Of a stretch of DNA of 64,000 nt, positions 4,435 to 51,200 are shown piece after piece. This stretch comes from Zootoca vivipara (Eukaryota). Below the pieces are notes generated by a model. That model ran no database searches. It was given only the letters and a program-made list of their open reading frames with translations, and had not been told where the DNA came from. The DNA lies in assembly GCF_963506605.1 (NCBI RefSeq), contig NC_083277.1:114452001-114516000 (forward strand), in the 5' to 3' direction. The translations under genes were made by a program, and so were the position numbers. The first letter of the stretch is position 1, and every line of letters begins with the position of its first letter.

Positions 4435-5100
4435 ATAAAGGAGATGGTGTTGGACTTCCAGAGGAAGAGAGGAGGACTAGCCCCGCTGTACATCAGGGAG
4501 GGCTGTGTGGAGAGAGTCTCTTCCTTTAAATTCCTAGGAGTTTATCTCCGTGAAGAACTTACTTGGAAAATCAATACAACCCAACAGAGACTCCATTTCC
4601 TTAGAGTATTGCAAAAGAACGATGTCAATCAACATATGATGATCTCCTTCTACCGGTCCACAATAGAAAATGTCCTTTCATACTGCATCACAGTGTGGTA
4701 TGCTGACTTGACATCAATGGATAGGAAGTGACTACAGAGGGTGGTGAATACAGCACAACATATTATGGGCTGTCCCATGAATCCGCTGGATGACATCGCG
4801 GAAGACCGTTGCCTCAGGAGAATGAGGAAAATTCTTAGGGATGATTCACACCCTGGCCGGCACTTTTTTGATCTCCTGCCCTCGGGCAGAAGATATAGAA
4901 GCATGATTAGTCGCACCAACAGGGTAAAGAACAGCTTCTATCCGCGGGCTGTTAGGCTGCTGAATGAAAAGATAACAACAGGGCAACTGACTTTCGGGTT
5001 CGGTGGGTGTGCGTCAGTAAATGAGGGGAATTAAGACTGGTAAGAGCTGGGTAATCATGTAATCTCACTGTATACAAGTTGTACAAGTGACAAAGCATTT
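4435..5100 (+). mobile_element. 5'-truncated Rex1/Babar-type LINE (RT C-terminal region), degenerate
   Basis: ORFs 4390-4731 and 4741-5034 read KEMVLDF..VERVSSFKFLGV..QQRLHFLR..FYRSTIE..YCITVWY..DSHPG..F.LLPSGRRYRS..RTNR.KNSFYP.AVRLLN. One in-frame stop at 4729-4731. Confidence 0.85.
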
Positions 5101-20500: not shown

Positions 20501-23500
20501 CACAACCACCCTGTGAGGTAGGTTAGGCTGAGAGGCTGTGACCGACCCAAGGTCACCCAGTGAGCTTCATGGCTTTGTGGGAATTTGAACTCTAGTTCAT
20601 CACTATAACTGCTACACAACACTGTCTCTAATAATGGTAGGGCATGCCCCTGCTGAAGAGGCAAAGATTAAAACTGCAAGTGCTTCATATACTCTGTTGT
20701 GGTCAAAACTGATCCAATGCAGCCCAAACCCGTAGTGATTGTACTGCAATCTTACACGTCCCTTGTTTGATTCTTGTTCCCCCCGCCCCCCCCCATCTGT
20801 ACACTCATTTCCTCCTCCATATGTCTGTCCTCACAGGGACGTTTCTGCTGCTTTTGGCATTTTTTGCTTTCCTACACTGCTGGCTGAATGCCTTTGCTGA
20901 GATGCTGCGCTTTGCTGACCGGACGTTCTACAAGGTGATTGGCAGGGGAAGGGCAGGGAGGAGGTTGGACTGCTTATACAGTGGTACCTCTACTTACGAA
21001 TGACTCGACTTACGAATGTTTCTACTTACGAATGGAGCTCCATCTGCCTCTTGAATGCTGTTTAGATAGGATTTTTTTCTACTTATGAATTTTTAGAAAG
21101 GGTTGCTTCTACTTACAAATTTTTTCTCCCAATGCATTCCTATGGGATTCGACTTACAAATGTGTGTTCGGAACGCATTAAATTCGTAAGTAGAGGTACC
21201 ACTGTATTCCATCCCTTCAGACACATGTGGTGGGTCATTTGGCTTCCTGGGAATGTCAGCTTTCAAATTTTGCCTTCATAGCTACCGGTACAAGCAGTGC
21301 TTTTTTTCTAGAAAAAGAACTCACCATGAACTCCTTCCTTGTTCTCTTATAATGGCAATGGCACCCACCTGAGATGTACGGGAACTGAGTTCGGCTGGAA
21401 AAAAAGCCCTGGTTACAAGCAAACAAAAAACCAAAATAGCTGCACATGCAAAGGCAGAGACTGCCTAAGGCGTTGAAATTAAAGGCAAGTAGGCCCAAGC
21501 AAAGTCATGTGCTCAGTCACTAGTAGCCACATCACACTGAACAGGCTTGTTTAGCTTCTGAAAACCCAATTATACCTGAACAACAACTTTCAACTGACAC
21601 AGCACAACTAACATTCTGGCTGCAAAACAGTCGATTCCATTCCAAACAGCCATTTTGTTGAGGGCAAGAGTTGGATTCTCACGGCATGAAAGACTGCCAT
21701 CTACGGCAGGGGTGCTAGCAGAGGAATGTGAAGAGAGGCAGTCTGGAGCAGAAATGCCCGGGTATGGTTTTGTCCCTCTAGGTGTTGCTGAACTAAACCT
21801 CCCATCAACCCTGGCAAGCATGGCCAACAGCGGGATGGTGGTGGGAGTTGTAGTTCAGCAACATCTGGAAGGACAAAGGTTCCCTACACCTGCTGTACAT
21901 GCTCAGATGCACTTTTTTCTATTACTATTTCATGTACAGTCACATTCGGTGCCAGTATCCAACTTAGGTCTTATGGTTGACCCCAGCACAATCAACTCTG
22001 ATAGAGCAGGCTATAGGGAGTGGGCAAAGATGAGCATTTGTCAAAGGAACTGGCCACACTGGGCACACTTGCCAGGCAGCACCTTCTCTTCTGCAGGCTG
22101 CCTGGACATGTGTGGCCCAAAATCTTTTGGGGGGCGATGATGCACAGTGTGGCCACACATAGCTATCCAGATTCATGATTGCACCTCTCTCTTTTTGTCC
22201 TAGGACTGGTGGAATTCCACATCATTCTCTACATATTACCGGACGTGGAATGTGGTTGTACATGACTGGCTCTACTACTATATCTATCAAGAAATCGTGT
22301 GGGTAGGTAAGGCTTTCGGGGGAGGAAACAGGTGCGTTGCACTGTTCACTTCCTTTAGGCCTGGGAGTTCAATCCGCTGTTTCTTTGCCCCTCTCCTGCC
22401 CCAGGGCTTCCTTTACTGCCCCAAACTGCACAGGCTTCATGATCTCCCTAAAGGACCCCTCTGCCAGACTGCTTCCCCACCCCCCACCCCGCAACATGCC
22501 ATGGGTGCAGTAAGAGTGCATTACTGGACCATCCACACATCGTTTCACATTGCTGTCTTATTCTGCGATGCTTCCTTCACATTACTGCACAAATGTCGCC
22601 TGGAAGGTCTCTCTCTTCTTAAAAACAAAAAAAGGTTTGTTGGGGGGGGGGTCTTCAACAGGTGCCCAATGAACCAGGCAAGAGTGGGGGTGTTTTCAGG
22701 GTGTGAGGCTGAGGAAAGGGAAAACTTTCCAAGTGGGAGCTGGAAAGACTCACTTATTTGAATGTAGATTGAAGATTAGGGTATAATTAGAATACTTCTT
22801 TCTTCCTTTGCCTTCCCCCCCCCTCTCTCTCCCTTTCTTTCTTTCTGAATTCATTTGTTCTAGATATAATTTTATTGTATTGCGAAAACTTGAATAAAAA
22901 ATTATGAAACAAGAAGCAGGTGCCCAAAGGACAATAGGGAGGGTGTTTGCCTGATACGTCTTTTTTTACCACACATGCCAAAGACCAGGATCTTTCGCAT
23001 ACAAAGAAAACTACAAAATGAAGGTTCCAGATGCATCTCTGTGGAAAGGGTTTTTTGCAACCACTCTTTGCCCCCATTTTTTTTTAAAAAAAAACTTCTG
23101 GGAGGAAAGTACTTCCAAAGTGTAAGTAAGGGTGAAGTACCTGTTGTAACTGCTCTGTGTCTTTCCTCACCTGGAGCAGTTTGCCAAAAGGGGCAGAGGT
23201 GCCATGCTAGCTTCCCACCAGGTGCATCTCCACTGCTTACCGGGAGGGAGAAGTGGAGGGGCGAGGCGGTGCAAATGCCAATCTGCCATTCCTGCTAATG
23301 CATTTGCACCATGACAACTTCCCTGCTGCCTCACTCCTCTCCCAGTAAGCAACAACAGCACACCTGTCGGGAAGTTAAGTGTCGCGGCTCCACCCCACCT
23401 GGCAAGCTGTTTCCGTTCTTCACTTTTCACTAGAGAGTGAACACAACATTGGCTGTTTCATGTACAAAACCTGCAACTGACCTGTGCACTTTGCTCCTTC

Positions 23501-25940
23501 CAGCTGCTCAGAGGAAAGGCCCGGGTTGGTGCAATGCTGTTTGCCTTCATCGTCTCAGCAGTCGTCCACGAATACGTCTTCACCGTGTGCTTTGGCTTCT
23601 TCTACCCTGTCATGTTCACCCTCTTTGCCTTCTTTGGAGGTCAGTACTGCCTCAGAAATTCATCTGAGCAGAAACCACTCCACCCGACTTGAGCACCTTG
23701 AGCACCGTCAAATTCTTGCAGTACGAAAGGGAAAACACATTGTTTTCTTATGTTCTTAAACAGCCCCGTGTGGTGCAAGGGAGCTTTTTAACCTCATGCA
23801 CACATTACATGCACCGGTCTTCCTCTCCAGGATTCATCCCATAGGCTGTTGTTTTACCCTCCCACCCCCTGCTCACACTCCAGGTCCCCTCCACACACAC
23901 ACCCAGCCCTTGCTCAACAGACTACTATAGCACCTGGAAGCTTGATGGTCCTTATTCAGGCAGTTTCAGATGGTTAAAAACCATTGCTTTTCATTTTCAC
24001 TTACTCATTGGACTTCCAGTGTATGCAGAAGTTTGTATTTCGAAACCACCGCCTTACTTTTTGGGTGGCCCCGTTTCACTTCCAAATGTTCAGAGTCGCA
24101 GTCAGCAATGCCACACACTTTTTCCAGGACACTCCATTCCATTCCCCCTTCCTTCCCAGGTTTTTCAGATCCACCTACAAGATGCACAATGTTTGCAGCC
24201 ACTGAGCATGCTCAGTGCTACGGTATCCTCATTGGGCTGGTGTTTAGCGGGGGGGGGGGGACACCAAAGCTCCCCATCCCTAAATATTTTTTCCTGCTGC
24301 TGCTGCAAACCTTGGCCTTCCCCTGAGCCTGCTGATACCTCCCTCATGCTTCTCAGGAGCCAATTGGGTTGCAAAGCTGCCATAACTCAACATCGGAGCT
24401 TGGTATTGATATATAACGACACATGTGAATGCCTGCAAGTTAGGATAATATGCTCTGTTCCCAAATTAGTTTCAGCTTTGCATGAAATGGGAACTGCTAT
24501 TCCTCCAAGTTCTAGGAACGAAGGTTGGGAGAAGGGCCATAGTTCAGTGGTATGGAGCATCTGCTATGCCTGCAAAAGGTCCCAGCTTCAATTCCCAGCA
24601 TCTCCAGGGAATGCCCCACCTGAAACCCTGGAGAGCTGCTGCCAATTACTGTTGGTTATATGCAGCTAAATGGACCAATTATCTGATTCACATTCCTATG
24701 TCACTATGGACCAGGGCGCTGCTCTGTAGCAGAGATTCCCAGAAACTGCCAGGTGAGAAAGCCCTTTGGTCCAATGTGTTCTGGACTGTGCCCAACTAAC
24801 CTTTTTTTCCTGATCTTCTTCACAGTGATCTTTAACTTCATCCTCAATGATAAGAGAACAAGCCCTGTATGGAACGTCATAATGTGGACATTCCTGTATG
24901 TGGGCCAAGGAATCCAGGTCTGCCTGTACTGCCAAGAGTGGTATGCCCAAATCCACTGCCCACTCAAAGAGGTGAGCATGCAGACTGGCCCATGGGTGCA
25001 GAACAAGCCCTCAATTCCTCCCATGTGCCAACTTGCAGAAGGCACAGCCCAAGGCATTTTGCTGCCTGAAGAACTCCCAGTTCTGTCTACTTCCCATAGC
25101 TCCCCATTTGCTGCCCGAGGCAGCTGCCTCACAGCATGGCCAGCCCTGGTATCAGGGATCAAAAGTCCCCAACCCTGAGTGTGTGTAATACACTGATTAG
25201 CACACATAAAGGCTCCACAATCCTGTGCAGTTCTGCCATATTTTCAATAACATGGTTTTCCAGCACATCAGTTAATGGCAAAATCCACAAAGAATCTTGT
25301 AGCATCTTGAATAATAAGTGTGCTTGCAGGCAGGTGTTTCTTGTGGGATTGGTGCTTCTCCTGCATGCATCTTTTTTTTTTTTTTTTGCTGTGTACACAC
25401 AATGTTGCTGCCATAAAAATGCTGGCCTGCATTCACACCCATTTAATTTGGATTTACTCTTCCCAGGAGAAATACTGTAACTTTCCCCACCCCTTCTGTT
25501 CCAATTAAACCTTCTCCACCTGAGACCCTGGGGAAACACTTCCAGTCAAAGTAGACAATATAGGCTATTTCACAGGTAGTCAAACCTTGAGATAGCTCAA
25601 TGATCTGCTTTCATAACTAAAACCCTGCCTGGAAGCTCCCTGCCAAATTTATTATGATTTAAGAGTTCCCGGGCTAGAGCCCATTTCATTATATTATGCC
25701 ATAATAAATGAGCTAGTTTTATAAAGTGTCACTCGGTGCACTAGCATAAATTGCCACCATATTGACCTAGATCTAACCACCAGTGAAAGGCATAACTTTG
25801 TGTACAGTATACCCTTTTGACTTGTCGAAGTCCTTTCCTTTTCTGATTCTGGCCCTCAGTGATGTTTGTTGTTGTTTTCTGCCTTTCAGAGGACCTTCTG
25901 GGGGATAGTGACTCCACGTTCCTGGTCCTGCCGCTCCTAG
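7764..25940 (+). CDS. SOAT2: Sterol O-acyltransferase 2 (ACAT2), MBOAT family; 15 coding exons, 1599 nt, 532 aa
   Basis: Exons 7764-7860, 9683-9741, 11471-11598, 13464-13523, 14550-14657, 15367-15649, 16998-17073, 17993-18074, 18713-18758, 19183-19312, 20837-20934, 22204-22302, 23504-23639, 24826-24971 and 25890-25940. All introns are GT-AG with consistent phases and there is no internal stop. Motifs: [51 protein letters not shown], catalytic VHEY, C-terminal TPRSWSC. The Cys in FCPTL, QWKRHVE and the CSAD neighbour indicate SOAT2 rather than SOAT1. Confidence 0.97.
9200..9345 (+). mobile_element. Penelope-like element 3' end; second copy ~56765-56875
   Basis: TCTGAAGAAGTGTGCATGCACACGAAAGCTCATACC...GTCTCTAAGGTGCTAC, near-identical in both copies. 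Confidence 0.65.
9683..9741 (+). CDS. SOAT2: SOAT2 exon 2 ([19 protein letters not shown])
   Basis: tttag acceptor, GTAAC donor; QWKRHVE matches human QWTRHME. Confidence 0.85.
10323..10572. mobile_element. Tc1/mariner (Tigger-like) MITE; relatives at 49208-49456 and 60663-60848
   Basis: TIR CAGTCGTACCTTGG...CCAAGGTACGACTG with a TA flank. Nested in an older repeat that also occurs, inverted, at ~50050-50315. Confidence 0.75.
10951..11337 (-). mobile_element. Sauria SINE, full length
   Basis: Minus strand begins GGGACGCGGGTGGCGCTGTGGTCTAAACC and ends in an (ACCTTT)n tail. Confidence 0.9.
11471..11598 (+). CDS. SOAT2: SOAT2 exon 3 ([20 protein letters not shown]...)
   Basis: AG/GT boundaries; matches human AVKAQLLEQAQGQLRELLD. 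Confidence 0.9.
11850..12081. mobile_element. Tc1/mariner MITE
   Basis: TA|CAGTGGTACCTC...GAGGTACCACTG|TA. Confidence 0.85.
13464..13523 (+). CDS. SOAT2: SOAT2 exon 4 ([19 protein letters not shown])
   Basis: AG/GTGAGT boundaries; matches human KQKVFIIRKSLL. Confidence 0.9.
13723..14243 (-). mobile_element. LTR-like/DIRS-like retroelement remnant in SOAT2 intron 4
   Basis: Minus strand starts TGTCATGGACTGG with a purine-rich body; family assignment tentative. Confidence 0.35.
14550..14657 (+). CDS. SOAT2: SOAT2 exon 5 ([15 protein letters not shown]...DFIDEG)
   Basis: Conserved ACAT motif, canonical splice sites. Confidence 0.95.
14905..15015 (-). mobile_element. CR1 LINE 3' end; others at ~40500-40625 (+) and ~57460-57545 (-)
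   Basis: CATAGAATC..GGAAAGGAACCCCAAGGGTCATC..TCCAACCCC, the CR1 3'UTR pattern. Confidence 0.7.
15367..15649 (+). CDS. SOAT2: SOAT2 exon 6 ([15 protein letters not shown]...[11 protein letters not shown])
   Basis: Inside ORF 15311-15877; transmembrane segments; canonical splice sites. Confidence 0.95.
16998..17073 (+). CDS. SOAT2: SOAT2 exon 7 ([16 protein letters not shown]...)
   Basis: MKxxxFLRE motif; tag/GTGAGT boundaries. Confidence 0.95.
17230..17592 (+). mobile_element. L2-type LINE 3' end with (ATT)n tail; relatives ~37630-37930 (+) and ~43130-43420 (-)
   Basis: ...GAAGCCGC.CAGAGTGGCTGGGGAAACCCAGCCAGATGGGCGGGGTATAAAT followed by a microsatellite tail. Confidence 0.7.
17993..18074 (+). 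CDS. SOAT2: SOAT2 exon 8 ([22 protein letters not shown])
   Basis: Conserved MBOAT motif; canonical splice sites. Confidence 0.95.
18713..18758 (+). CDS. SOAT2: SOAT2 exon 9 ([15 protein letters not shown])
   Basis: Matches human TPYVRWNYVAKNFAQ. Confidence 0.95.
19183..19312 (+). CDS. SOAT2: SOAT2 exon 10 ([20 protein letters not shown]...NATLP)
   Basis: Conserved translation; canonical splice sites. Confidence 0.95.
19874..20437 (-). mobile_element. Non-autonomous Helitron
   Basis: Minus strand reads A|TCTATATATATATAAATGT ... CACAGCAACGCATGCAGAGCCAGCTAG|T: TC...CTAG termini, AT target site, no TSD. Confidence 0.7.
20445..20630 (-). mobile_element. Squam3-like tRNA SINE
   Basis: Reverse complement of GCCATGAAGCTCACTGGGTGACCTTGG...CTCAGCCTAACCTACCTCACAGGG. 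Confidence 0.7.
20837..20934 (+). CDS. SOAT2: SOAT2 exon 11 ([25 protein letters not shown])
   Basis: Conserved MBOAT motif. Confidence 0.96.
20979..21204. mobile_element. Tc1/mariner MITE
   Basis: TA|CAGTGGTACCTCTACTTACGAA...TTCGTAAGTAGAGGTACCACTG|TA, perfect TIRs. Confidence 0.88.
22204..22302 (+). CDS. SOAT2: SOAT2 exon 12 ([24 protein letters not shown]...)
   Basis: FYxDWWN motif spans exons 11/12. Confidence 0.96.
23504..23639 (+). CDS. SOAT2: SOAT2 exon 13 (catalytic His, SAVVHEY)
   Basis: [10 protein letters not shown]...GFFYPVM. Confidence 0.96.
24826..24971 (+). CDS. SOAT2: SOAT2 exon 14 ([14 protein letters not shown]...YCQEWYA...CP)
   Basis: Conserved translation; canonical splice sites. 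Confidence 0.96.
25890..25940 (+). CDS. SOAT2: SOAT2 last coding exon ([16 protein letters not shown])
   Basis: Matches human [16 protein letters not shown]; TAG at 25938-25940. Confidence 0.95.
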   Translation, partial: RTFWGIVTPRSWSCRS

Positions 25941-26249
25941 GTCAATACCAGCTACCTTTGAGAAGCTACCTTCCCCATCCCTTTGCTCCAAACAGATCTT
26001 CCTGGACTCACACTCTGACCATTAGAGGAGTTGGAGTCCAACATCTTCAGAGGAGGGTTAGGTTGCCCATACTTGCTGTTGGCTCAAATTCAAGTACCCA
26101 GCATTGACTGACTAATCCTTCCCCCAGCATAGCAAGAAGGTGATTTACCTGTCCACTGTTGTTGCTTGATTCCAGCATCTACGTAATACTTCAAAGTTTG
26201 CCTAGCATCTACTTACTCAGTTTGTTCATGACTGTTTTCTACTTTAAAA

Positions 26250-26255
26250 AATAAA
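26250..26255 (+). terminator. Likely SOAT2 polyadenylation signal AATAAA
   Basis: First AATAAA after the stop codon (~310 nt downstream), with T/GT-rich sequence further downstream. Confidence 0.55.
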
Positions 26256-26889
26256 ATTCTGTACACACAAGTAATTCGGATTCTGCTCTCAGAAATGTGG
26301 AGTTCTGAATCATTCATATATTATATGAATTACTACCTTTTGTTTTTTTTTTGTTTTGGTTATGCTTTTGCAGCTAAAGATATACTGTACAACAAAAGAT
26401 AACCAAAAAGGTTATGCCTTTGCAGTTAAAGATATACAGCATTTCCAGACATCCTGCTAAAAGTACATGATTGTGCAGTCATTTTTTAAAAGAAGCTGTG
26501 CCCTGGCTATCAGCTGTTTTCTGGGAAATGTGGCCTGGAATGGACTGAATAGAGCCCCAAGCTCTGCCACAGCTGCTTGGGGCTCAGTTGACTGAGCTGA
26601 AACTGGCTGAGCAGAGGCTCGTGTAAGTTCAAAAAGGGGTCCTTCCTGTCCAGCTCAGCTACCTTACCTTGCAATCCAGTGTAGAACACTATTTAAAGGC
26701 TGGTTTTCCCTCGGCCAGGCTTAGACAGAGAGGGCTGCTGCTGAACACACTTTGGATCTTATGTAACATTGCTATTGCTTGAATTGCTATTCAAGTGGTA
26801 TATGTGTGTTTTGTGATTATGTGGGCTGGGGCTTACCTGCCCTCCACCCCCAATATTTTATTCAAGTTGGCACCCCCTGCGATTCCAGT

Positions 26890-27990
26890 CTGAGGTCACT
26901 CCCCGGCGCGCTAGCGGGAGAGGCGCCGGGCATTAAACCTGGTACGTTTTGAGCACAAAGGGAGGGGCGCCTCCCCGCAACGCTACTCTTTCCCGCTCCG
27001 GAACTGGAGCTCGCGTGCCGATCCTTAGACACAAACGGCTTTCTTGATTTCAGCAGCCCTATCTAGGGAGGGTGGGGGGAGCTTTTACTTGTTGCTGCTC
27101 GAGACGCCGATGAAGAGCTGGGGGGGGGTCTTTGTCGATCATCTACAATTACAAATCATCCGGAGATCATCCCCATTTACTTTCTGCCCATACCTGGGGG
27201 GGGGGGGGAAACCACCCTAGTCCGCTCCCCTAAAAAACCACAAAAAAACCTCCGACCCCCACAGCCTTGGCACCGCCCCGCCCCAACTTCCTGGACTAGT
27301 CGAGGCTGCATCTCCCGTTCCACCGCGGCGCAGGAATCGAAAGCAGCCGCTGTGCGGAAGCAGCAGCAGCGCTGTTGCAGCCCGCCTTTCCGCGCGCCCT
27401 CTGCTCCTCACGTCACTAGGAAGAGGATTTCCCGCGTGGTTCTTTGTCTAGGAAAAGTAACTGTGTGTGTGTGTTTATCTGGACTGGGCAGCACCCGCTC
27501 CTTCCATGGCGGCTGCGAGAGAACGGTTGCTGCAGATCCTCGAGGATCTGACAGCCGAAGAGTTCCGCAAATTCGTTTTCCACCTGGAATCCATCCCGGA
27601 CCGATCTGTCCGAATCCCTCGAGGGAAGCTGGAGAAAGTCTCGCCGGTCGAGCTAGCCGAGCTGCTTGCGCGGTATTTTCCCGGGAAAGAATTAGAAGTC
27701 GCCGCCCACGCGCTGGGAAAGATACCCAGGAGGGATCTTCTGCGGGACCTAGGCGACGTAGCAGTGGGCGATCGCCCGAGCGGAAGGGGTACCCCTGTGA
27801 TAGACCTCGTGGAAGCAGCTGCAGGTGGGTACTGTACAGGTGGGCGCAGGTGAGTAGGGCCTACAGCCCGAACCCACAGGGAGAGCTCGGAGCAGGGAGG
27901 GGGTAGAGGTTTTGTTGTCTAGGACAGGGATGCCCACTTGAATAAAATACTGTATTGGGGGAGGGCGGGTTAGCCCCGCCCCGCCCCGCC
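26890..27990 (+). promoter_or_regulatory. CpG-rich promoter/first exon of the PYD-DD gene
   Basis: Dense CpGs. GC box CCCCGCCCC ~27276, ETS cores ACTTCCTG ~27286 and CGGAAG ~27355, CRE-like TCACGTCA ~27408, kB-like AGGATTTCCC ~27424. Confidence 0.65.
27506..27824 (+). CDS. PYD exon of the PYD-DD gene
   Basis: Same register as the ASC PYD (L12-E13-x-L15-T16-A17-E18-E19...K22-F23; RIPRG). Alternative donors after 27839 and 27849. Confidence 0.9.
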
Positions 27991-30137
27991 CCACATAATC
28001 GATCTTATGACATGGTGCACACTCACTATTTGAATGTGCTTCAACTTTGGGAGGGTCCGGCGGCCCCATCAAATGTTTTATTGGGGGAGTTAGCTCCTAT
28101 GGTCCAGGACTCCATTTTGTCTTGGGCAGGGGAAGAGAACCTGTCGACCTCTCTCCCCACTCCCCCCCCCCATGTTTGTGGGACTGTAGCTCTCTTCATA
28201 CCTGATCGTTGGCTATGCTGGCTGGGGCAGATGGGAGTTGAAATCCAGCAACATCTGGAATCGCACAAGGAACTTCCAGGAAACGTTCGGAGTATGCTTC
28301 ACAGCAAGTAAAACTACTCACACACATACAGAGGCACACACACACACACACACAAAAAAAACCTCACACACGTACAGAGGCAGAAACTGTGCTCCAGTGT
28401 GGACCACCTAGTCAGGTAACATGCAATTTTGCACTGGATTTTCTTCCCTTATCAAATTATTCCTGGATCTGGCAGGCTGCTGCTTAGATAAAGAGGATGT
28501 TGTGTAGATGTAAATAAATAGAGACCCAAGTAGCATCACATCCACATTAAACTCCTGTGCAGATGAGCCCATTCCCTCTCTAATGGGATCTTGGTTTCCA
28601 ACTGGGCAGGAAGTGGAAGGGTGGGAAGGGAAAGGATAGTCCATTTGGAGCAGGTTTTGTGGTGTGCACTTTCAAGGGCGTACCCACCACGGGGCAAGTT
28701 AGGGCAGCTGCCCTACTCTAGAAGCAGGGCTGGTGGGCAGAGGCGGAGCACAGCCCGGCGGAGCGCGAGTTCGCCATTCCCGCCCCGCCGCGCCGCACCC
28801 TCCCTCCAGCTCCCCAGCGCGCCCTCAGGCAAGGCCAAGCGCGGCGGGGAACCAGGGAGCGCGGCGCGGTGGGCGGCAACGCTGAACTCGCGCTCCGCTG
28901 GGCTGGGCTGGGCTCCGCCTCCGCCCACCAGCCCTGCTTCTAGGGAGGGGCACAGCCCGGCGGAGCGCGAGTTCGCCATTCCCGCCCACTTTGTGGCCCC
29001 TCCCCTTCCGTGCCTTGGCCCCTCCCCTTGCCCCCCTGCCCCCCCTAGTTTTGATTCTGGGTACGCCCATGTGCACTTTGCCTGTACCCCTCATCTCTTC
29101 CTGGAGCATTCCTCAAATGCCCCTGGGTGCACCCCTGTTCCAGCACCTACACAGATAAAATTTTCTTCTGGTGTCCAACTTACCGGTAAAACTAGGACTC
29201 AGCCCCAGACCAGGATGAGTGGGTGAGCTTCCACAACAGGTCTGAACCCTCATTAGAAATTCCAGCTCATTTTATCTGGCAAGGATCCTGCACCTTTAAC
29301 AGCTGCACAACAGGCAGGAATTCACATGGGATAACTTTTCTGACATGGGGAGAACTTCACGGGTTGATTTCGGCTCGTGGAGCAGCTTTTAAAGCAGGAG
29401 GGGGAGCTTCTGGCCCTCCCAGATGGTGCTGGACTTCATTTCCCATCAGAGCCAGGCAGCATGGCACAATGGTCAGGGTGTTGGGAGTTGCAGCCTAAGC
29501 TGAAAGGCAGCAGATACCTTATCCTTATCTAAAAGGCTCGTAAACCATTTTCCTTGCCTAGCCACTGCCTTGTGTCTTGCTTGTTATTTGTTTTGTTATA
29601 AACATCTAAATACCCAGAGGAATACACAATAAAGCAAAGAATAAAAAGGAGGCATTGTTAAAAGCAAAAATCTCAGCTGGGAAGCTTTCCTGTTTGGTTG
29701 CCTGGATTTCATCCTCATCCCCAGTGATCAGGCAAATCATTTTTAGCAAGCCTGCGAGGAGTCCCATCTTGCCAATGAAGCGAACAAAAGGTACCAGGTT
29801 AGCTCCGCTCTTGTGCCTCTCATAATATTCCTTCCTTCCTGCTCTTGCAGTGCAACCCAGTTGCGTCTCACAGCAGCAGCTGATGAAGCTAGCCAGGAAG
29901 TTGGGCAGGAAATGGAAGACGATTGCCATCGAGTTCCTGGAGGTGGAAAATTCACGCTTGGAGCAGATCGAAGAGGAGAATCACAAGGACGTGGTCATGC
30001 AAGCTTTCTACATGCTTTGTGAATGGAGGAACCGTGAAGGAGGGAAGGCCACTGCAGCCAATTTATACCTTATTCTCGACCAGGTTGGAGTGAATCTTGA
30101 CCATGATGCATATGCGTTCCTGAGAGAGTGTGCCTGA
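27506..30137 (+). CDS. Uncharacterised PYRIN-domain + Death-domain adaptor protein (PYD-DD), ~201 aa, two main coding exons
   Basis: Exon 27506-27824 (ccATGG start; MAAARERLLQILEDLTAEEFRKFVFHL...RIPRGKLEKVSPVELAELLARYF, an ASC-like PYD) ends at a phase-1 CAG|GTGGGT donor. It joins in frame to a phase-1 acceptor (polypyrimidine tract + TGCAG at 29850) opening exon 29851-30137 (QLMKLARKLGRKWKTIAIEFLEV...LEQIEEEN...QAFYMLCEWRNREGGKATAANLYLIL, a death domain). 606 nt, no internal stop. The exact junction is uncertain because there are alternative donors. Confidence 0.85.
29851..30137 (+). CDS. Death-domain terminal exon of the PYD-DD gene
   Basis: Death-domain signature LA.KLG..W....., LEQIEEEN, ML.EWR.REG..AT...L...L; strong acceptor; TGA at 30135-30137. 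Confidence 0.9.
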
Positions 30138-30348
30138 AAGAGTTCTTGAAAGGCAGAAGGCCACCCAACAGTCTTCTCCAGCAACTCAGGCTCTCCAGAT
30201 ACCTTTCCCAATGCAAGTGAACACAGATTGTAATGATTTGTTGACTGATGTTTACGCTCATATGGCTGAGCTGTGAGGGGGGGTGGGGGGGTGTTCGAAA
30301 TCAGCCAAGTGCCAGGCACATTTTGCACCTGACTATTGGCCACATGCA

Positions 30349-30672
30349 GGGACGCAGGTGGCGCTGTGGTCTAAACCAGAGAACCTAGGGCTTGCCGATC
30401 AGAAGGTTGGCGGTTTGAATCCCCGCGATGGGGTGAGCTCCCATTGTTCGGTCCCTGCTCCTGCCCACCTAGCAGTTCGAAAGCACGTCAAATGAAAGTA
30501 GATAAATAGGTACCGCTCCGGCGGGAAGGTAAACGGCGTTTCCGTGTGTTGTTCTTGTTCGCCAGAAGCTGCTTAGTCATGCTGGCCACATGACCCGGAA
30601 AAACTGTCTGCAGACAAGCGCCGGCTCCCTCCGCCTATAGAGCGAGATGAGCGCCGCAAGCCCAGAGTCGTC
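30349..30672 (+). mobile_element. Sauria SINE (3'-truncated) just downstream of the PYD-DD stop codon
   Basis: GGGACGCAGGTGGCGCTGTGGTCTAAACC head. Confidence 0.88.
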
Positions 30673-31386
30673 CATGGCAGAGTATATATTCCAGCACATA
30701 TTAAAACAGAGTAAGAATAAGCTCCTTCAAAAAGTGGATGACCTGGTATAATGGTAGCCAGGGTGTTTGTGGCACTTTCAGAAGTATTTTAATGGAATTG
30801 CTCTCCAGAGAGGTTCCATTCTTAGAGAAGTCCCTCAATCTAAGTAATCCCTGCTTCTTCCAACCGAGCCTGAGTCTATCTTTGTTGAAAAAAGAGGGGT
30901 GGTAAGCCAGAGGAAGGAAGTTGTTCAGTTCTGTGGGAGTCCCCCCCTCAAGCTGGTTTGAGAGCAGAGCTCACTCAGCAAGGTGTCTACCAATATTGTG
31001 CACCAGAACCACTGTTAGAAACCCAAATATATAAGCTAGGCGCCAAATGGCTCCTTAAATCAGGGTTACAGTTGCCAAAACAGAATGTCTAGTTGCCATT
31101 TGGGGGCAAGACGGCTCTAAAGTCCTATTTTTCAAAGGATGCACTGACTGATTGATTAGAATCTGGCTGGTTCAGATGACAACCTTGAGCTAGGTTAAGA
31201 GCTTTGAGACCTTAAAGAAGAGAAGTAACTTGATCCAGGGACAGTCCACATATACATTGGCCTATTCTGACCTCTTTTTCTCAATGGTGACAAGGGCCAT
31301 TCATAATGTAAAAATATTCTTCACAACTGTGACCAGGGCAGTGGGACAGGGTAAGTGATGGGCAGTCCCCCATTGAGATGGGCAGA

Positions 31387-32316
31387 GTATATATATAAAA
31401 ATGTAGGCATTGCGCGTGCGGAGGTCACAGCCTTTCTCCGTAACTGCTGAACCGTAATGTAACAAATTTGGCCACAACGTTCCATGCCCATCAGGGAAGG
31501 ATCTGACATAATTCCCCCCCAAAAAAAACCACACCTTTCACACCTAAAATAATGATTAAACACAAAAAAGTGGCACCCAAATTAGACGTCACCACCAGAA
31601 GCTCTGTAGACTCCAGCAGCATCCAATAGAAAGGCAGTTCGCACGCTGCTGCCTCAAAAGCTGCGCCACCAGATGACATCACAAAATTCCGCACCAACCA
31701 ACTCAAAACAGTCCGTTTGCAGCAACATGGCCCAGCTTTTTCAATAGGCCGCAGCATTGCCCAGCAGGGAAAAATGAGTAGCCCGCACCATTCAGTAGGC
31801 CACAGGCAAAAACAAACAGAATATGGGGCTTTCACAACGGGGGGGGGGGGGGGTCACAGGGATGAGGCACAACAAAGGGAGGGGGAACACATAGCCATGG
31901 GGGGGGGAGGAAGAACCCTGACCCAGCCAAAGCAGTGGGGGGTGGGTTGGGAAAGGGAAAACTGAGTAGGCCGCAACAATGCCCAGTAGGCCACAGGCAA
32001 ATACAAACAGAATATGGGCCTTTCACAGGGTGGGGGAATCACAGGGATGAGGCACAACAATGGGGGAGGGGGCTCACAGAGATGCACCACAACAAAGGGG
32101 GGGGAGGTAGGACCCTGAGTCAGCCAAAGCAGTGGGGGGGACATTTTCAGGAACACGCGGGGGTGGGGAGTCTTATTTTTGAAACTTACAGTAGGGGAGT
32201 CAGGGTTGGGACAGGGCAAGTGAAGGGACTCTAAAGGGAGACTCTGAAGGTCCATTTAACAGGAAAAGGTCCATTTAACACAAAAACCCACAGCAACGTG
32301 TGGCCGGGCCAGCTAG
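31387..32316 (+). mobile_element. Non-autonomous Helitron with internal ~190-bp direct repeat
   Basis: Starts TATATATATAAAAATGT, ends CACAGCAACGTGTGGCCGGGCCAGCTAG|T; termini related to 19874-20437. Confidence 0.65.
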
Positions 32317-36147: not shown

Positions 36148-39100
36148 CTAAACCCGGGCAAAGAAGGAACCCAGTCTCAGAATTCAGTTGGACACTGGGA
36201 TGCAGCACCCACCCACCCCAGTTTAGAAGAATGAGCACATGCACAATATTCCCGGGCTCCTGTCGGAGCGGACCATTTCCTTTACAGGATTCTCAACGTT
36301 TACCTTTCCCAATTTCTGACAGTAATCTGTGCATCCCTCCTTCCCGCGTAGGCTGGGAGGAACGTACCAAAAGCACAGATTGATGAATTCCGGCTAAAAG
36401 AAAAGAGGAAAGACATCTTAAGGGAAGTGTTCAGGACTATATTTCTCCTACACACCCATCCCCTGTGAAGTGTGAAGTTCTGGGGGCCCTGGTCTATATT
36501 TCAATAGTATACACCCCCTATCTGCAGGGGTGCCTCTTCATCCTGTCAATCATCAGGTGACTGAGAGTTCAAGCCAGGCTCAGGGTGACCTCGGATCTTA
36601 CTGCTGCAAAGTGCAAAAATTGGATAGAAGTGACCTGTTATCTAAGGTTCAGATCTCCGTGCTTGGTGGCATAGGATGCCCGGTGTCTGGCGGGTGGGCA
36701 TGTTTCACCCAAAACACCAAAGAAAGATGCCAAGGCTCAAACCTTTGAAGGTTGATTGTAGGTGAGGAAACAGCCTGCAGCTGTGAGTGAAGAGTGTGTG
36801 CTTTGCATGTGGAGTGCTCTGAGTTCAGGTCCTGCCTTCTCCAAAACATCCTCAATGATGACTAGTAAAGGTCCCCTCACAAAGACAGCCTCACTGCTTG
36901 AGGGCTTGAGGAATCATTGGTCCAACACTACAAAAGACGCCTTCATAGGTGTAAGACTAGTCAAAGAAGAGCAAAAGTCTCGGCAAGCCTAGGGGCGCCC
37001 TTCTGTGTCCTGTGTCCACTGAATACAGATTCTGAGACTGAGGCCTGTCGAGTCCTGGAGCTCAGGCACTTCTTACCTCTATCACCAGCTGAAAGCCTTC
37101 TCTCTTCTTGATCTCATCAGCCAGGTACCTAGCGGAGGGAAGGAGGAGAATGCCAGGAAACTGGGATGAGCTCTGTAACATTCACCTGCTGGCAACTAGG
37201 CAGTGGAGGCGTCATCCCGATTCCCTCGGCTTTGAGAAAGGACAAGTTGAAAGGGAGACCACCCACGCCGTTCCCACCCTTACCCCACAAGGCGCACCTG
37301 GTGATGGCGAAGGCCCTGTCGACTCTCTGCTCTAAACCCCTCGTGCCATTGGCCTTCCACATCAGCCACAGCTTGAAGCAGTCGACTTTGCGGCCACACT
37401 GGATGGTCTGGTCCCCCCTGTCGTAAGTCCTGTTGTAGAACTTGTCAGTCTGGAAGAGGTAAGTGGCTTCAGCGCAGTGGCATCTCTGCAGCAGGCCCTG
37501 CCATGGAGGAGAAGCCAAAACAGAATTTTACAAAACATGTTCCTACGTTCTATTGTAACATATTCCTGCCTTCCCCCGCCCGGTCCATTAAAATGGCTTT
37601 TGATCATTCTCTAAGGGCCTTTCTTCACATGTCTCTTCCACAAGAGGTCCAGAAGGCAGCAACACGAGAGCGGTGACTTTTCCGTGTTGGCATCCTGCTT
37701 GTGGAATGCTCTCCCCAGGGAGTCTTGCCTGGCGCTTTCGTTACGTATCTTTAGCTGCTAGTCAAAAATATTCCTCTTCTCTCAGGCCTAGCGTCTTTTA
37801 AATCGTGTTTGAGGTGGGGTATTGTTTTTGTTTGTTATTATGATATGTCATTTGTGTTTCTATATTGTATTGTAAACTGCCCTGTGGTCTTTGGATGAAG
37901 GGCAGGATAGATATCAAATAAATAAATAAATACCCTGTTTCTCATATTTTAAGACATACCGATAAAATAAGCCATAGCAGGATTTTTAAGCATTCAAGGA
38001 ATATAAGCCATACCCCGAAAATAAGACATAGTGATAGGCGCAGCAGCAATGCCGGCCGCAGCAGGAGGAAGAGGAAAAAAATAAGACATCCCTTGAAAAT
38101 AAGCCATAGTGTGTTTTTTTGAGGAAAAAATAAATATAAGACGTGTCTTATAATATGAGAAACACGGTAAATAAATAGTGTGGCTTTCAACCACAGTTAA
38201 GATAAGAAATACACAGGATAAAAGCATGAGATATTAAAAAAAGATCAGGAGATTCAAAAACTTTTGGGATTTTAGAACTAGCGCAAGAGCAGGCTTCCAC
38301 AGGGGGGGAAAACAACGACCACAATATGGGACACACTTCCACAACCTCGGGCAGTCCAGATGTTTTGGACTCCAAATCCCATCAGCAACAGTCAGCATCA
38401 TGTTTTGGACTACAGTTCTCATCAGCCCTAGCCAATATGTGGATGATGGGAATTGTAGTCCAAAATACCTGGAGGTCACCAAGTTGGGGAAAGCTGGCCA
38501 AGGCATAACGATGGAGATAGCTCCGCATCTCAGCTAAGTGCAGTTCGAAAGTGGGCAGGACAAAAAGGAGTGTCTCCAAAGCAGATCTCAAGGACTGCCT
38601 CGCCCCATTGTGAGGCGGCCTACTCTTTAAGAAGTCCTGGTCTTGAGGTAGGACCTTGCAAATCTGGGAGGCAGTGGAAGACAGGAGTGCCTGGTGTGCT
38701 CTGGTCCATGGGGTCACAAAGAGTCGGACACGACTAAACAACAACAACAACAAAGGAACTTGCTAGCACAAGTTAGGAAGGATATTAATAAACAGTATAT
38801 CCTCTCCTGCAACCCTCAACATTCCAACAAAAAGTGGGTGGGACACTCCTTTCTCCCAGCCATCTCCTTTCTGCATTAATTTTTTTCCTTCCTTGCCACT
38901 CACATGACATTAGGCCACAGGCCAAATGCTGCTTTCAGGCTGCGGGCTGCCCACCCCTGGACTAGCTAGCTTTCTAGTTTCCTCCTTACAACTGATAGGT
39001 GGAGTTCCTTAAGCTGAATCATCCCCAGCCCAAATACCTACGGAGTTGTCATGGAGGAGGAAGGCAGAACACTGCAGCCCAGTCATAAGCATTTTGTGGG

Positions 39101-48200: not shown

Positions 48201-51200
48201 GAAGTATGTCCATAGATTTAAGCCTAATTATCTTCTTTAACCATGGAAATCCCCGCCATGCAGATTAGCGTCCGGGAGTCCTGGCCCTCGTAAGTGCTTT
48301 TCAGCCCAAGCTCCCCCCACTCCATAAACAGTCGGAGTGGGTCTGGGGGCATCGCGGGCCAGCGGCCCCTCTCCGTAACCCCCGGAGAGGGTAGGGGGTT
48401 GCCATTTACTCCCCTAGCAACCGCCAAATTCCTTACGAAGGTCAGAGGGATGGAAAACAGGTCCGCCATTCCTGCCGGCGGAAACCGGAACCTCCGATCA
48501 TGGTGTGGATTTGCCAAGCGTGCCTTCCTCTTAGCACGTTTCTCCCTTGTGTCCTGAGTTCGAGTTTCTTCAAAGCCCATGGCACCTTTGGTAAAGGCTG
48601 TTCTCCAACTGGAGCGCTCGCAGGTCAGTGTTTCCCAGTTGTCTACATTTTTAAAGATTTGCCTTGAGACAGTCTTTAAACCTCTTTTGTTGACCAACAA
48701 CATTACGCTTTCCATTTTTAAGTTTGGAATGGAGTAGTTGCTTTGGAAGGCGATCATCAGGCATCCGCACAACATGACCAGTCCAACGAACAAGGTGATG
48801 ATCCAGCGAGTAGGCCTGTCCTATGATATCACCACCTCAGGGCTTATGTTCTTGCTGCTCTTGCTTAATGGTTGCTCCTTGTAATGGATGCAAATATGTG
48901 AATACAACTGTGTCATGTTTCTACCCCACAACTTGGCATTATCAGAAATATTTAGTTTGCCTGCATCACAGGAGGTGGCTCACTTAGAAAACTGCTATGC
49001 TTTTCTTCCTTTCAGGATCAAGGATGGAATCCGTGAAGGGGGGGGGGCTTTTGTGACAGTACTCACCGCTACAGAGTACCATGATTCTCTTTTTTGCTGC
49101 CCATGGCAGCCATTTTGTACAGCTACCCATGGCCCTTCTAGTCATATATGAACACTGGCACCTCAATTTTTTTACCCCCCCAAAAGCGCTAGATACAGAT
49201 ACAGATACAGTGGTACCTCGAAAGTCGAACAGAATCCATTCTGAAGTCCGTTCAACTTCCAAAACGTTTGGAAACCAAGGCACGGCTTCCGATTGGCTGC
49301 AGGAAGCTCCTGCAGCCAATCGGAAGCCGTGGAAGCCACGACAGACATTCGGTTTTCAAAGAACGTTCGCAAACCGGAACACTCACTTCCGGGTTCATGG
49401 CATTCGTTAGCCTAAACGTTCGACTCACAAGGTGTTCAGGATCCAAGGTACAACTGTACAGTATATAGAGAGGGATAAGGAAAGAAATATATGCATAAAA
49501 AAAACCATGTATTTCAGAGTTGGAAGCTGTTTGGGGGAAAAGATTGTATGTGCACCAAGACCACTTTTGCCTCTGGTAAAGTGTTCTGCATTTCAAGAAC
49601 CTGCAAACCCCGTTTGATCGCAGAGGACAAAATAAATATGTGGGTAGACCTTAGGAAGCAATGCCCCTAATCTACTAAATCTAACCATTTCCAGATCTTT
49701 TTAAAACTATAATCCGTACTGAGCCCAAGAGAGCCACTGCAACCTATTTTAATGCCACGGTTTCATCAGAAAAGTGCAAACACATACTGGCTGGTGTTGA
49801 GCATCTCTGTGATCAGCCGTCCGGCCAAAGCATGGGGATCAAGTCCTGAAAACAACTGGTTGAAAAATCGCGGGTGACCTGAGAAAGAAAGAGAAAGTGA
49901 GTGTGTAGCTATGCTGAACTGAAACTACTTTGGATCAGTATGCAGCACAATCACATCATACCAAATAAAATTCTCTTTTTGGAAGTGGTGTGTGGGGAAC
50001 ACACTCTTTTACACAGGGCATGAATGAAAGGTACAGCAGGAAGGCATTCGGGCCAGGCAATTTCTGGTTTTCAACATCGTGATATATCACCAGCTAAACA
50101 TCATGATATACTGATATATCGCAATGTCTGAAATAAGGATAGAGCTACGTAGAGGCATTGGCTGGCTTCGAGGTTTTTCCCCGCATCGTGATTTTTGCAT
50201 AGCGCGTGCACACACACACACACATATCATGGTTTGCAATATATTGCCAGGTCAAAAATTATGAAACTTATATCATGGAGTTCAAACCGGTTTTGGACGA
50301 TATATTGCCCAGCCCTAGAAGACGCTTGTTTTCTGAAGAACTTATTACTTTGCCTCTGATCATGGGAACACCGCTGTCTCTGTTTGCTGAAAATATGCCA
50401 GGACGTGGTGTTTCCTTTAGGACATATTTACATAACCAGAGATATTTGTCCTGAATTCTGACCTCATGTGTACAAGGACAGCAAATTCCAGGGTGTTTTA
50501 GCCGCACCCCTTGGCTCACAATTTTCATCGCCTTTGGGCCACTGTGCATTTATAGGCTATTTTAAATCCACATTGGAGGCAATAGCCAGCTTTGTTATCA
50601 GGTCACTTAACATGAGAAACATCCCGTTTTGCTGCTTGAGGCCATGGAAACAAGACTTAACTGAAGCAGGAACTACATATTACTCCACATGTGGAAACTA
50701 CGCTATTTCATGAACGAGCTGCTGGTGCCAGGCACTCACAAGTCTTCACGCTGTATCTGATAACATCCCGGCAGCGGTCCAGCAATCTCTCCTGCGGCTC
50801 CCCTCCGTCTTTTAGGTCCAGGTCCAGGATTTGCTGCAGCTCCTCAGGTTCCTTCCAATCACACACCTAACAAGGAAGGAAACAGGTTGGCCAGTTCGTA
50901 TTGAAAAGTTCAGGCGGCATCACATAAATGCTTGAATAACATGGTCCCGTCCTCACGTTATACCATCGGGATGAGGTGGGATTGCTACTAAACCCTCTAG
51001 ATGCCGGCGCAAGCCCAAGGAGTGCTGCTGGCGCGGCAAAGTTATGATGCTAAAGTGATGCTGGTTTGCTCTCATAACACAGGGCCGGTCAGCCCATGAG
51101 GCGGGCTGAAGCAGTCGCCTTGGGCAGCTCCCAGGGTTGCGCAGCAGTGCTTTGGGAAGCTGTCACTGCCAGTGTACAACCCCAGTAAAAAATGTAAAAA

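What the first reader, a model, noticed from the sequence alone, without database searches (positions are those of the whole stretch)
27506..30137. Intact PYRIN + Death-domain (PYD-DD) bipartite adaptor gene: a candidate reptile inflammasome-to-death-signalling bridge
Seen: a CpG-island exon encodes a PYD in the same register as ASC. E13, K22 and the RIPRG loop (ASC R41 equivalent) are kept, and ASC K21 is Arg. It splices in phase onto a terminal exon encoding a complete death domain (LARKLGRKW...LEQIEEEN...MLCEWRNREGGKAT..L..IL), giving ~201 aa with no lesions. Known: mammalian two-domain death-fold adaptors are ASC (PYD-CARD), FADD (DED-DD) and RAIDD (CARD-DD); I know of no characterised vertebrate PYD-DD adaptor. 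Inference: it could couple PYD sensors (NLRP/pyrin-like) or ASC filaments directly to DD proteins (FADD, RIPK1, TRADD, PIDD1/RAIDD or MyD88/IRAK). That would be an alternative route from inflammasome sensing to caspase-8/2 or NF-kB.
Basis: partly seen in the sequence, partly recalled or inferred. Interest (0 to 1): 0.95.

Follow-up and report, generated by a model that had tools for sequence, protein, structure and literature searches.

The report
Lizard pyrin–death-domain adaptor gene
This is a real, expressed two-exon lizard gene for a small protein with a pyrin domain joined to a death domain; it belongs to an old vertebrate family that databases mislabel, that one 2024 paper mentions in passing, and whose function nobody has tested.

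Summary
Exon 1 (27506-27824) scores as a PYRIN domain (Pfam E 3e-17). Exon 2 (29851-30137) scores as a Death domain (E 1e-10), not CARD or DED. The phase-1 join 27824|29851 is in frame. It is seen in RNA reads of two runs (5 and 8 reads) and in one contig of a third run whose RNA origin is only guessed. The 201-aa product is identical to an NCBI protein of Zootoca vivipara that is misnamed "ASC".

It is neither reptile-specific nor unnoticed. Full-length PYD+DD orthologues occur in a shark, coelacanth, caecilian, salamanders, turtle, alligator, birds, echidna and marsupials. I found none in placentals. Billman et al. 2024 (PMC11258412) already describe this architecture in birds, reptiles, coelacanth, caecilians and marsupials, without testing function.

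Possibly new here:
- Ray-finned fishes carry a related death domain behind a CARD (zgc:174906).
- The DD is more conserved than the PYD.
- The PYD resembles NLRP pyrin domains more than ASC's.
- The gene lies between SOAT and CSAD exons.

The best reading is a RAIDD/ASC-style bipartite death-fold adaptor.

The parts
27001..28000 (.). CpG island over the promoter, 5'UTR and exon 1
   Evidence: GC 0.59 and CpG o/e 0.77, against about 0.1-0.4 in most other 1-kb bins.
27283..27505 (+). 5' untranslated part of exon 1 (minimum extent)
   Evidence: The X1 contig runs unbroken from 27283 to the donor (table 8, record 2). I saw no upstream ATG in this stretch.
27506..27824 (+). Coding part of exon 1: Met1 to the first base of codon 107. 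It holds the pyrin domain (residues 1-83) and most of the disordered linker.
   Evidence: Pfam PYRIN E 3.2e-17. The nearest solved sequences are the NLRP6 and NLRP3 PYDs. The AF2 model has six helices over residues 2-82. ASC PYD 7e5b aligns at TM 0.83, rmsd 1.4.
27825..29850 (+). Intron (2026 nt, GT..AG), phase 1
   Evidence: The joint that skips 2026 bases is seen in X15, X17 and X1. The intron holds a (CA)n tract at 28319-28372 and a GC-rich palindromic repeat at 28709-28989.
27825..27849 (+). Two further candidate donors: after 27839 (phase 1, would add 5 residues) and after 27849 (phase 2, out of frame). Neither was seen in use.
   Evidence: Sequence and phase are. No joint from either site reached the reporting threshold, where depth was low.
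29851..30137 (+). Coding part of exon 2: the last two bases of codon 107, the end of the linker, the death domain (residues about 109-201), and the TGA stop at 30135-30137
   Evidence: Pfam Death E 1.1e-10. The nearest solved sequences are the THOC1, PIDD, ankyrin, RIPK1, FADD and CRADD DDs. The AF2 model has pLDDT 80-89 over residues 110-180. RAIDD DD 2o71 aligns at TM 0.80 and ankyrin-G DD at rmsd 1.8.
30138..30377 (+). 3' untranslated region (minimum extent). It runs into a tRNA-derived SINE.
   Evidence: X1 contig 7 covers 29942-30377. There is no AATAAA or ATTAAA before 30700.

Best explanation
This is the Zootoca vivipara orthologue of an old, single-copy-looking vertebrate gene. [quoted passage not shown]

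Shown: the gene is intact, transcribed from a CpG-island promoter, spliced in frame, and conserved with this architecture from a shark to marsupials.

Inferred: it works like RAIDD, FADD or ASC. The better-conserved death domain docks into an oligomeric death-domain platform. The pyrin domain then polymerises, or joins pyrin-domain filaments, to pass the signal on. Ray-finned fishes carry a related death domain behind a CARD. This suggests the death domain is the fixed, input side and the N-terminal domain the exchangeable, output side. Which proteins it binds is not known.
For: Domains: Pfam PYRIN and Death are both well above cut-off. An AF2 model built with 31 orthologues gives two helical bundles and a linker below pLDDT 50. 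Foldseek's best hits are full-length ASC, THOC1 DD, RAIDD DD and ASC PYD.

Expression and splice: junction reads in two RNA runs and one contig.

Identity: 100% to the 201-aa NCBI Zootoca protein, with lacertid orthologues of 206-208 aa.

Conservation of architecture: phmmer over 1.84 billion representatives finds full-length two-domain relatives. They come from gecko, skink, iguanians, snakes, turtle, alligator, birds, echidna, marsupials, caecilian, salamanders, coelacanth and shark. Pfam confirms PYRIN+Death in the shark, coelacanth, bird, echidna, marsupial and newt proteins.

Constraint: mean pairwise identity is 49% in the DD, 38% in the PYD and 21% in the linker. The motif P74-R75-x-D77-L78 is nearly invariant.

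Fish counterpart: zgc:174906 proteins are CARD+Death. Their DDs form one clade (98/97) among the PYD-DD clades.

Literature: the same protein is noted, with no function tested, in PMC11258412.
Against: No binding partner has been tested here or in the literature. Billman et al. point out that songbirds keep the protein although it is their only annotated PYD protein, so a heterotypic PYD partner cannot be universal. The variants listed from the sequencing runs give 8 non-synonymous to 5 synonymous changes, so constraint within the species is not strong. The backbone of the DD tree is unresolved and is rooted on one long amphioxus branch, so orthology of the fish CARD-DD is plausible but not shown. 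A four-copy PYD complex prediction gave no answer.
Confidence: 0.6

Rival explanations
1. It is a decoy or brake rather than a transmitter. Like PYD-only and CARD-only proteins, it would cap pyrin-domain filaments or death-domain assemblies and damp signalling. The second domain would tether it to the complex it inhibits.
For: The protein is small, has no enzymatic or sensor domain, and evolves fairly fast (83-91% identity among lacertids; 8 non-synonymous to 5 synonymous variants). Solved PYD relatives include POP1.
Against: Both domains have been kept together for over 400 million years, and the DD is well conserved. This fits a two-sided adaptor better than a simple cap. Nothing tested here tells the two readings apart.
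Confidence: 0.2
2. The pyrin domain has no heterotypic partner. It serves only to self-polymerise, turning a death-domain signal into a threshold-type aggregate. The pathway concerned would be a death-domain pathway (PIDD/RAIDD-, FADD/RIPK1- or THOC1-like), not an inflammasome.
For: Songbirds keep the gene as their only annotated PYD protein (PMC11258412). The DD is the better-conserved half. The N-terminal domain could be exchanged for a CARD in ray-finned fishes.
Against: Self-assembly was not shown, since the complex prediction gave no answer. Lizards, unlike songbirds, keep NLRP proteins with pyrin domains, so heterotypic use is possible there.
Confidence: 0.15
3. It is a gene-prediction artefact or a decaying gene: two unrelated death-fold exons joined by noise splicing.
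For: RNA depth over the gene is low, with only about 6% of each run read.
Against: The exact in-frame junction recurs in three runs. The same two-domain product is predicted in dozens of species across vertebrate classes with open frames. Variants keep the frame open, including a 3-nt insertion.
Confidence: 0.02
4. It is the lizard ASC (PYCARD), as NCBI's name for the Zootoca, Lacerta and Podarcis lilfordi proteins says.
For: It has an N-terminal PYD and is about 200 aa long. Foldseek's top hit is full-length ASC 2kn6.
Against: The C-terminal domain is Pfam Death, with no CARD hit at E<=1. It aligns to solved DDs, not CARDs. The PYD scores lower against ASC than against NLRPs.
Confidence: 0.01

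Closest known systems
The unnamed PYD/DED + death-domain protein of birds, reptiles, coelacanth, caecilians and marsupials noted by Billman et al. 2024 (PMC11258412; often annotated 'CRADD protein' in songbirds)
   Same: Same architecture, size and lineage. Bird members (Nyctibius 'CRADD protein', Rhea, Willisornis) are full-length hits of the lizard protein, and the Nyctibius protein scores as PYRIN+Death in Pfam. The window's gene is the Zootoca member of this family.
   Different: Nothing in kind. Added here: RNA evidence for the splice, members in a shark, a monotreme, salamanders, a turtle and a crocodilian, the position between SOAT and CSAD exons, and the CARD-bearing fish counterpart.
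zgc:174906 proteins of ray-finned fishes (teleosts, gar)
   Same: About 220 aa and two domains. The C-terminal death domain is related to the lizard one (phmmer E 3e-11 to 5.5e-7 for four of them). NCBI gives the coelacanth PYD-DD protein the same name.
   Different: The N-terminal domain is a CARD, not a PYD. I found no paper on its function.
ASC / PYCARD (PYD-CARD)
   Same: A bipartite death-fold adaptor of about 200 aa with an N-terminal PYD and a flexible linker. ASC PYD aligns to the model at TM 0.83, rmsd 1.4.
   Different: The C-terminal domain is a death domain, not a CARD. The PYD is closer in sequence to NLRP4/6/14/9/3 and pyrin than to ASC.
CRADD / RAIDD (CARD-DD)
   Same: Same size and layout, with a C-terminal DD. 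RAIDD DD aligns at TM 0.80, rmsd 2.5. It scores 49 bits against the family profile.
   Different: The N-terminal domain is a PYD, not a CARD. With the single sequence, the match to CRADD DD is weak (E 0.009).
FADD (DED-DD)
   Same: A bipartite adaptor with a C-terminal DD. FADD DD scores 48 bits against the family profile. Snake orthologues are annotated 'FADD-like'.
   Different: The N-terminal domain scores as PYRIN (62.9 bits), not DED (20.6 bits, below the cut-off of 35.9).
Death domain of THOC1 (p84N5)
   Same: It is the nearest solved death domain by sequence (E 5e-9 with the single exon; 59 bits with the family profile).
   Different: THOC1 is a 657-aa nuclear TREX subunit with a C-terminal DD and no PYD. 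The similarity says nothing yet about binding.

Membership tests
PYD-DD short adaptor family (Billman et al. 2024) | N-terminal pyrin domain | tested here: met
   Pfam PF02758 E 3.2e-17, 62.9 bits against a cut-off of 22.9. The model has a six-helix bundle.
PYD-DD short adaptor family (Billman et al. 2024) | C-terminal death domain of the RAIDD/PIDD/FADD/ankyrin type | tested here: met
   Pfam PF00531 E 1.1e-10. PDB hits are THOC1, PIDD, ankyrin, RIPK1, FADD and CRADD DDs.
PYD-DD short adaptor family (Billman et al. 2024) | About 200 aa with no further domain | tested here: met
   The product is 201 aa and no other Pfam family passes its cut-off.
PYD-DD short adaptor family (Billman et al. 2024) | Full-length sequence similarity to the bird, reptile, coelacanth, caecilian and marsupial members | tested here: met
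   Single-stretch or two-stretch full-length matches at E 1e-14 to 1e-48, with species. The DD tree groups it with lacertids and other squamates.
ASC / PYCARD | C-terminal CARD | tested here: not met
   No CARD hit at E<=1 for exon 2; Death scores 41.9 bits.
CRADD / RAIDD | N-terminal CARD | tested here: not met
   Exon 1 scores as PYRIN, with no CARD hit at E<=1.
FADD | N-terminal death effector domain | tested here: not met
   DED scores 20.6 bits, below the cut-off of 35.9 and far below PYRIN at 62.9 bits.
PYD-only proteins (POP-like) | Transcript that ends after the pyrin domain | tested here: inconclusive
   Read-through or use of the donor at 27849 would give a PYD-only product. No such joint reached the threshold, and depth just past the donor is low. 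The reads were too few to exclude it.
Functional death-fold adaptor (works like RAIDD/ASC/FADD) | Each domain binds a homotypic partner or self-assembles | not testable with these tools
   The four-copy PYD complex prediction gave no answer.

The most novel reading that the evidence does not exclude
The PYD-DD protein is a lost arm of vertebrate death-fold signalling. In this reading it is an adaptor that couples a death-domain platform (PIDD/RAIDD-, FADD/RIPK1- or THOC1-type) to pyrin-domain filaments (ASC or NLRPs) in all jawed vertebrates except placentals. Ray-finned fishes would reach the same end with a CARD. In birds it could stand in for the missing ASC.
Probability: 0.12. Interest if true: 0.75.

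Novelty: already known. Interest (0 to 1): 0.4.

Why it matters
Death-fold adaptors (ASC, FADD, RAIDD, MyD88) define the main cell-death and inflammation pathways, and all the characterised ones were found in placental mammals. This is a fifth combination, PYD-DD. It is kept from sharks to marsupials and appears lost in placentals, which may be why nobody has studied it. Birds have lost ASC yet keep NLRP3, and the adaptor there is an open question; this protein is the obvious but disputed candidate. The CARD-for-PYD exchange in ray-finned fishes and the stronger conservation of the death domain give concrete, testable hints about which side is input and which is output. The lizard gene itself adds no new kind of thing: it is annotated (under a wrong name) and the family has been mentioned in print.

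Tried and rejected
- My first exon coordinates were off by one. They were corrected to ATG 27506.
- The single-sequence AF2 model was poor for the DD and was replaced by the alignment-based model.
- Complex prediction with four copies of the PYD (residues 1-90) gave no answer, score 0.00. This is neither for nor against self-assembly.
I therefore had no orthologue DNA, no codon-level dN/dS and no orthologue synteny.
- Literature searches for 'PYD-DD', 'PYD-Death' and similar terms returned nothing relevant. The zgc:174906 search found two unrelated papers, and the CRADD+PYD+birds search found only Billman et al..
- A PDB search with a fish CARD-DD protein gave only DD hits, so it gave no clue to the CARD's partner.
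- Rfam found nothing in 26000-32000.
- tblastn of all collected death-fold proteins found no second PYD or DD exon in the window.
- The idea that the fish CARD-DD is simply CRADD was rejected. The lizard DD matches zgc:174906 proteins at E 3e-11 to 5.5e-7 in a library of 1.8 billion, but matches human CRADD DD only at E 0.009 in a library of 0.18 million.
Full report
**What is in the sequence.** An ATG at 27506 opens a frame that runs to a TGA at 27851-27853 if the intron is read through. Three GT donors lie close together: CAG|GTGGGT after 27824, CAG|GTGGGC after 27839 and CAG|GTGAGT after 27849. The first two leave phase 1 and the third leaves phase 2. The acceptor CTTCCTTCCTGCTCTTGCAG|TG at 29850/29851 needs phase 1 to read the long frame that ends at TGA 30135-30137. 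My first coordinates were one base off and were corrected.

- Exon 1 (27506-27823) matches Pfam PYRIN at E 3.2e-17 (62.9 bits, cut-off 22.9). DED is far below its cut-off.
- Exon 2 (29853-30134) matches Pfam Death at E 1.1e-10 (41.9 bits, cut-off 22.6), with no CARD or DED hit.
- Against solved structures, exon 1 is closest to the NLRP6 and NLRP3 pyrin domains.
- Exon 2 is closest to the death domains of THOC1, PIDD, ankyrin-3, RIPK1, FADD and CRADD.

In one search a script indexed codons across the two exons to classify variants. It printed only lengths and codons, and nothing joined was searched.

**The product is a known database protein.** I searched with the open frame around exon 1, using the reference window:27467-27850 scored on residues 14-119, so that proteins of about 200 aa fell inside the tool's length band. 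The search returned a 201-aa protein of Zootoca vivipara that is 100% identical over exon 1. It carries precomputed Pfam Death+PYRIN and the NCBI name 'apoptosis-associated speck-like protein containing a CARD'. Its sequence is exon 1 to 27824, then Val, then exon 2. Orthologues of 206-208 aa exist in Lacerta agilis and three Podarcis species.

**RNA.** I laid 5,001 letters (26800-31800), which is within the operators' limit. I used three 2026 RNA-seq runs with the same species label and one contig-only run whose RNA origin is a guess.
- The joint 27819->29846 'GT..AG (cut +5)', that is 27824|29851, is carried by 5 reads (3 starts) in X15 and 8 reads (8 starts) in X17.
- It is also carried by one 578-nt X1 contig that runs from 27283 through the donor into exon 2.
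- All junction reads lie on the orientation expected for a + strand RNA.
- No joint from 27839 or 27849 reached the threshold. Only about 6% of each run was read, so minor forms are not excluded.
- Variants in these runs keep the frame open, including a 3-nt insertion after 27747.
- Of 13 listed coding differences, 8 are non-synonymous and 5 synonymous. Several of them (E137G, C163W, V185D) change the reference residue to the one seen in Lacerta and Podarcis.

**Structure.** With an alignment of 31 orthologues, AF2 gives mean pLDDT 71. The N-terminal bundle has helices at 2-13, 17-28, 39-42, 47-57, 62-70 and 76-82. The linker at 84-108 is below pLDDT 50. The C-terminal bundle has pLDDT 80-89 over most of its length. 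Foldseek's best matches are full-length ASC (2kn6), THOC1 DD, RAIDD DD (TM 0.80), ASC PYD (TM 0.83, rmsd 1.4) and ankyrin-G DD.

**Distribution.** phmmer of the 201-aa protein against 1.84 billion cluster representatives gave 255 hits at E<=0.001. Many are proteins of about 185-226 aa matched over both domains.
- Source names place them in geckos, skinks, Sceloporus, Phrynocephalus, snakes, a turtle, alligators, birds (Rhea, Nyctibius, the songbird Willisornis), echidna and marsupials.
- They also occur in a caecilian, two salamanders, coelacanth and the shark Heptranchias.
- Pfam confirms PYRIN+Death in the shark, coelacanth, bird, echidna, marsupial and newt proteins.
- A profile of the mammalian members found only marsupials and echidna and no placental. 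This is absence of evidence from a word-indexed search, but it agrees with the literature.
- Names in the databases are inconsistent: 'ASC', 'FADD-like', 'CRADD protein', 'pyrin-like' and 'ZGC:174906'.

**Ray-finned fishes.** The proteins named zgc:174906 in teleosts and gar match the lizard protein only over the death domain. Their N-terminal domain is a CARD by Pfam. In a maximum-likelihood tree of 40 death domains, the fish CARD-DD proteins form one supported clade (98/97). That clade sits in an unresolved polytomy with the PYD-DD clades of birds, mammals, sharks and squamates plus salamanders. This fits one exchange of the N-terminal domain on the ray-finned stem. The backbone is open and the root is one long amphioxus branch, so it is not proven.

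**Conservation pattern.** Mean pairwise identity across 31 orthologues is 49% in the death domain, 38% in the pyrin domain and 21% in the linker.
- A family motif at the start of helix 6 is nearly invariant: P74 (26 of 31), R75 (28), D77 (28) and L78 (30).
- The equivalence of these positions to ASC E13, K21, K22 and R41 rests on my memory of human ASC. It was not tested with a tool alignment.
- With the family profile, the pyrin domain scores higher against NLRP4, NLRP6, NLRP14, NLRP9, pyrin and NLRP3 (50-58 bits) than against ASC (32-39.5 bits).
- The death domain ranks THOC1 (59 bits), then CRADD (49), FADD (48), RIPK1 (43), ankyrin-3 (40) and PIDD (34).

**Surroundings.** Only one PYD exon and one DD exon are in the window.
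- Upstream on the + strand lies the C-terminal exon of a sterol O-acyltransferase at 24753-25175 (SOAT1/SOAT2, E 3e-20).
- An ORF at 22252-22761 looks like another SOAT exon by eye; Pfam found nothing in it.
- Downstream on the - strand lies a cysteine sulfinic acid decarboxylase exon at 37132-37518 (E 3e-27).
- From memory, SOAT2 and CSAD are direct neighbours in human. If so, the lizard gene sits in an interval that is empty in placentals. I did not look at human sequence.
- A tRNA-derived SINE follows the 3'UTR at about 30348-30670 and accounts for the very high read depth there.

**Literature.** Billman et al. 2024 (PMC11258412, section 9) searched birds for PYD proteins. [quoted passage not shown] They doubt that it links NLRP3 to caspase-1, because songbirds keep it although their NLRP3 lacks a PYD. 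No other paper in the library deals with it.

**Reading.** It is shown that this is a real, expressed, conserved PYD-DD gene. It is inferred that it acts as a RAIDD/ASC/FADD-style bipartite adaptor. The conserved death domain would be the side that docks to a death-domain platform, and the exchangeable N-terminal domain (PYD, or CARD in ray-finned fishes) would be the polymerising or effector-recruiting side. Rival readings are a decoy or brake, and a self-polymerising amplifier with no heterotypic PYD partner. The 'artefact' and 'true ASC' readings are effectively excluded.

**Verdict.** The gene and its architecture are already in databases and in one paper, so it is not new as a kind. Its function is an open and testable question of moderate interest.

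Noticed in passing
window 22252-22761 (+) and 24753-25178 (+): Exons of a sterol O-acyltransferase. The last coding exon matches human SOAT1 and SOAT2 equally well (E 3e-20). The 22.2-kb ORF ([10 protein letters not shown]...) looks like SOAT by eye only, and Pfam found nothing in it. The gene ends about 2 kb upstream of the PYD-DD promoter.
   Followed up: partly
window 37132-37518 (-); CpG island 58001-59000: An exon of cysteine sulfinic acid decarboxylase (CSAD; PDB 6zek E 3e-27, Pfam Pyridoxal_deC) lies tail-to-tail with the PYD-DD gene. The second CpG island of the window (GC 0.59, o/e 0.89) at 58 kb could be its promoter; this was not tested.
   Followed up: partly
window about 30348-30670: A tRNA-derived SINE of squamate type lies just 3' of the gene. 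It draws very high read depth (up to about 20,000 summed contig depth in X1) and many loose ends and inverted joints from other copies. Rfam gives no hit.
   Followed up: partly
window 28709-28989 (intron): A GC-rich palindromic repeat (57-nt arms, 86% complementary, plus a 44-nt direct repeat). RNA reads map on both strands and show 'opposite strands' joints, so it is probably a dispersed repeat transcribed elsewhere.
   Followed up: no
window 29862-29863 (codon 111, linker) and other exon-2 sites: All 9 X15 reads and the X1 contigs carry a haplotype that differs from the reference at several sites. Codon 111 reads Cys in the window, Arg in X1, Leu in X15 and Gln in Podarcis and Lacerta. Variants E137G, C163W and V185D match the Lacerta and Podarcis residues. 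This could be a divergent lineage or allele. A paralogue elsewhere in the genome is not excluded.
   Followed up: partly
database proteins P0001, P0002, P0005, P0009, P0022, P0020, P0177, P0192: Annotation names for this one family are inconsistent and mostly wrong: 'ASC' (lacertids), 'FADD-like' (snakes, newt), 'CRADD protein' (birds), 'pyrin-like' (shark) and 'ankyrin-3/ankyrin-1' (characiform fish CARD-DD).
   Followed up: yes
proteins P0010 (Trachinotus anak, 1552 aa) and P0012 (1727 aa): These are very long proteins (P0010 is from the fish Trachinotus; P0012's source was not looked up). The lizard query matches them in 8 and 13 separate stretches, and the best stretch falls in the query's PYD part, so they may be tandem pyrin-domain arrays.
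   Followed up: no
window 4390-4731 (+) and 48224-48793 (-): Retroelement-like ORF fragments. The first hits Pfam ALKBH8_N; the second looks like a LINE C-terminal fragment by eye only.
   Followed up: no
window 27420-27436: A near-consensus NF-kB-like decamer (AGGATTTCCC) and an ETS-like AGGAAG lie in the 5'UTR/promoter region. They were seen by eye only and not tested against chance.
   Followed up: no
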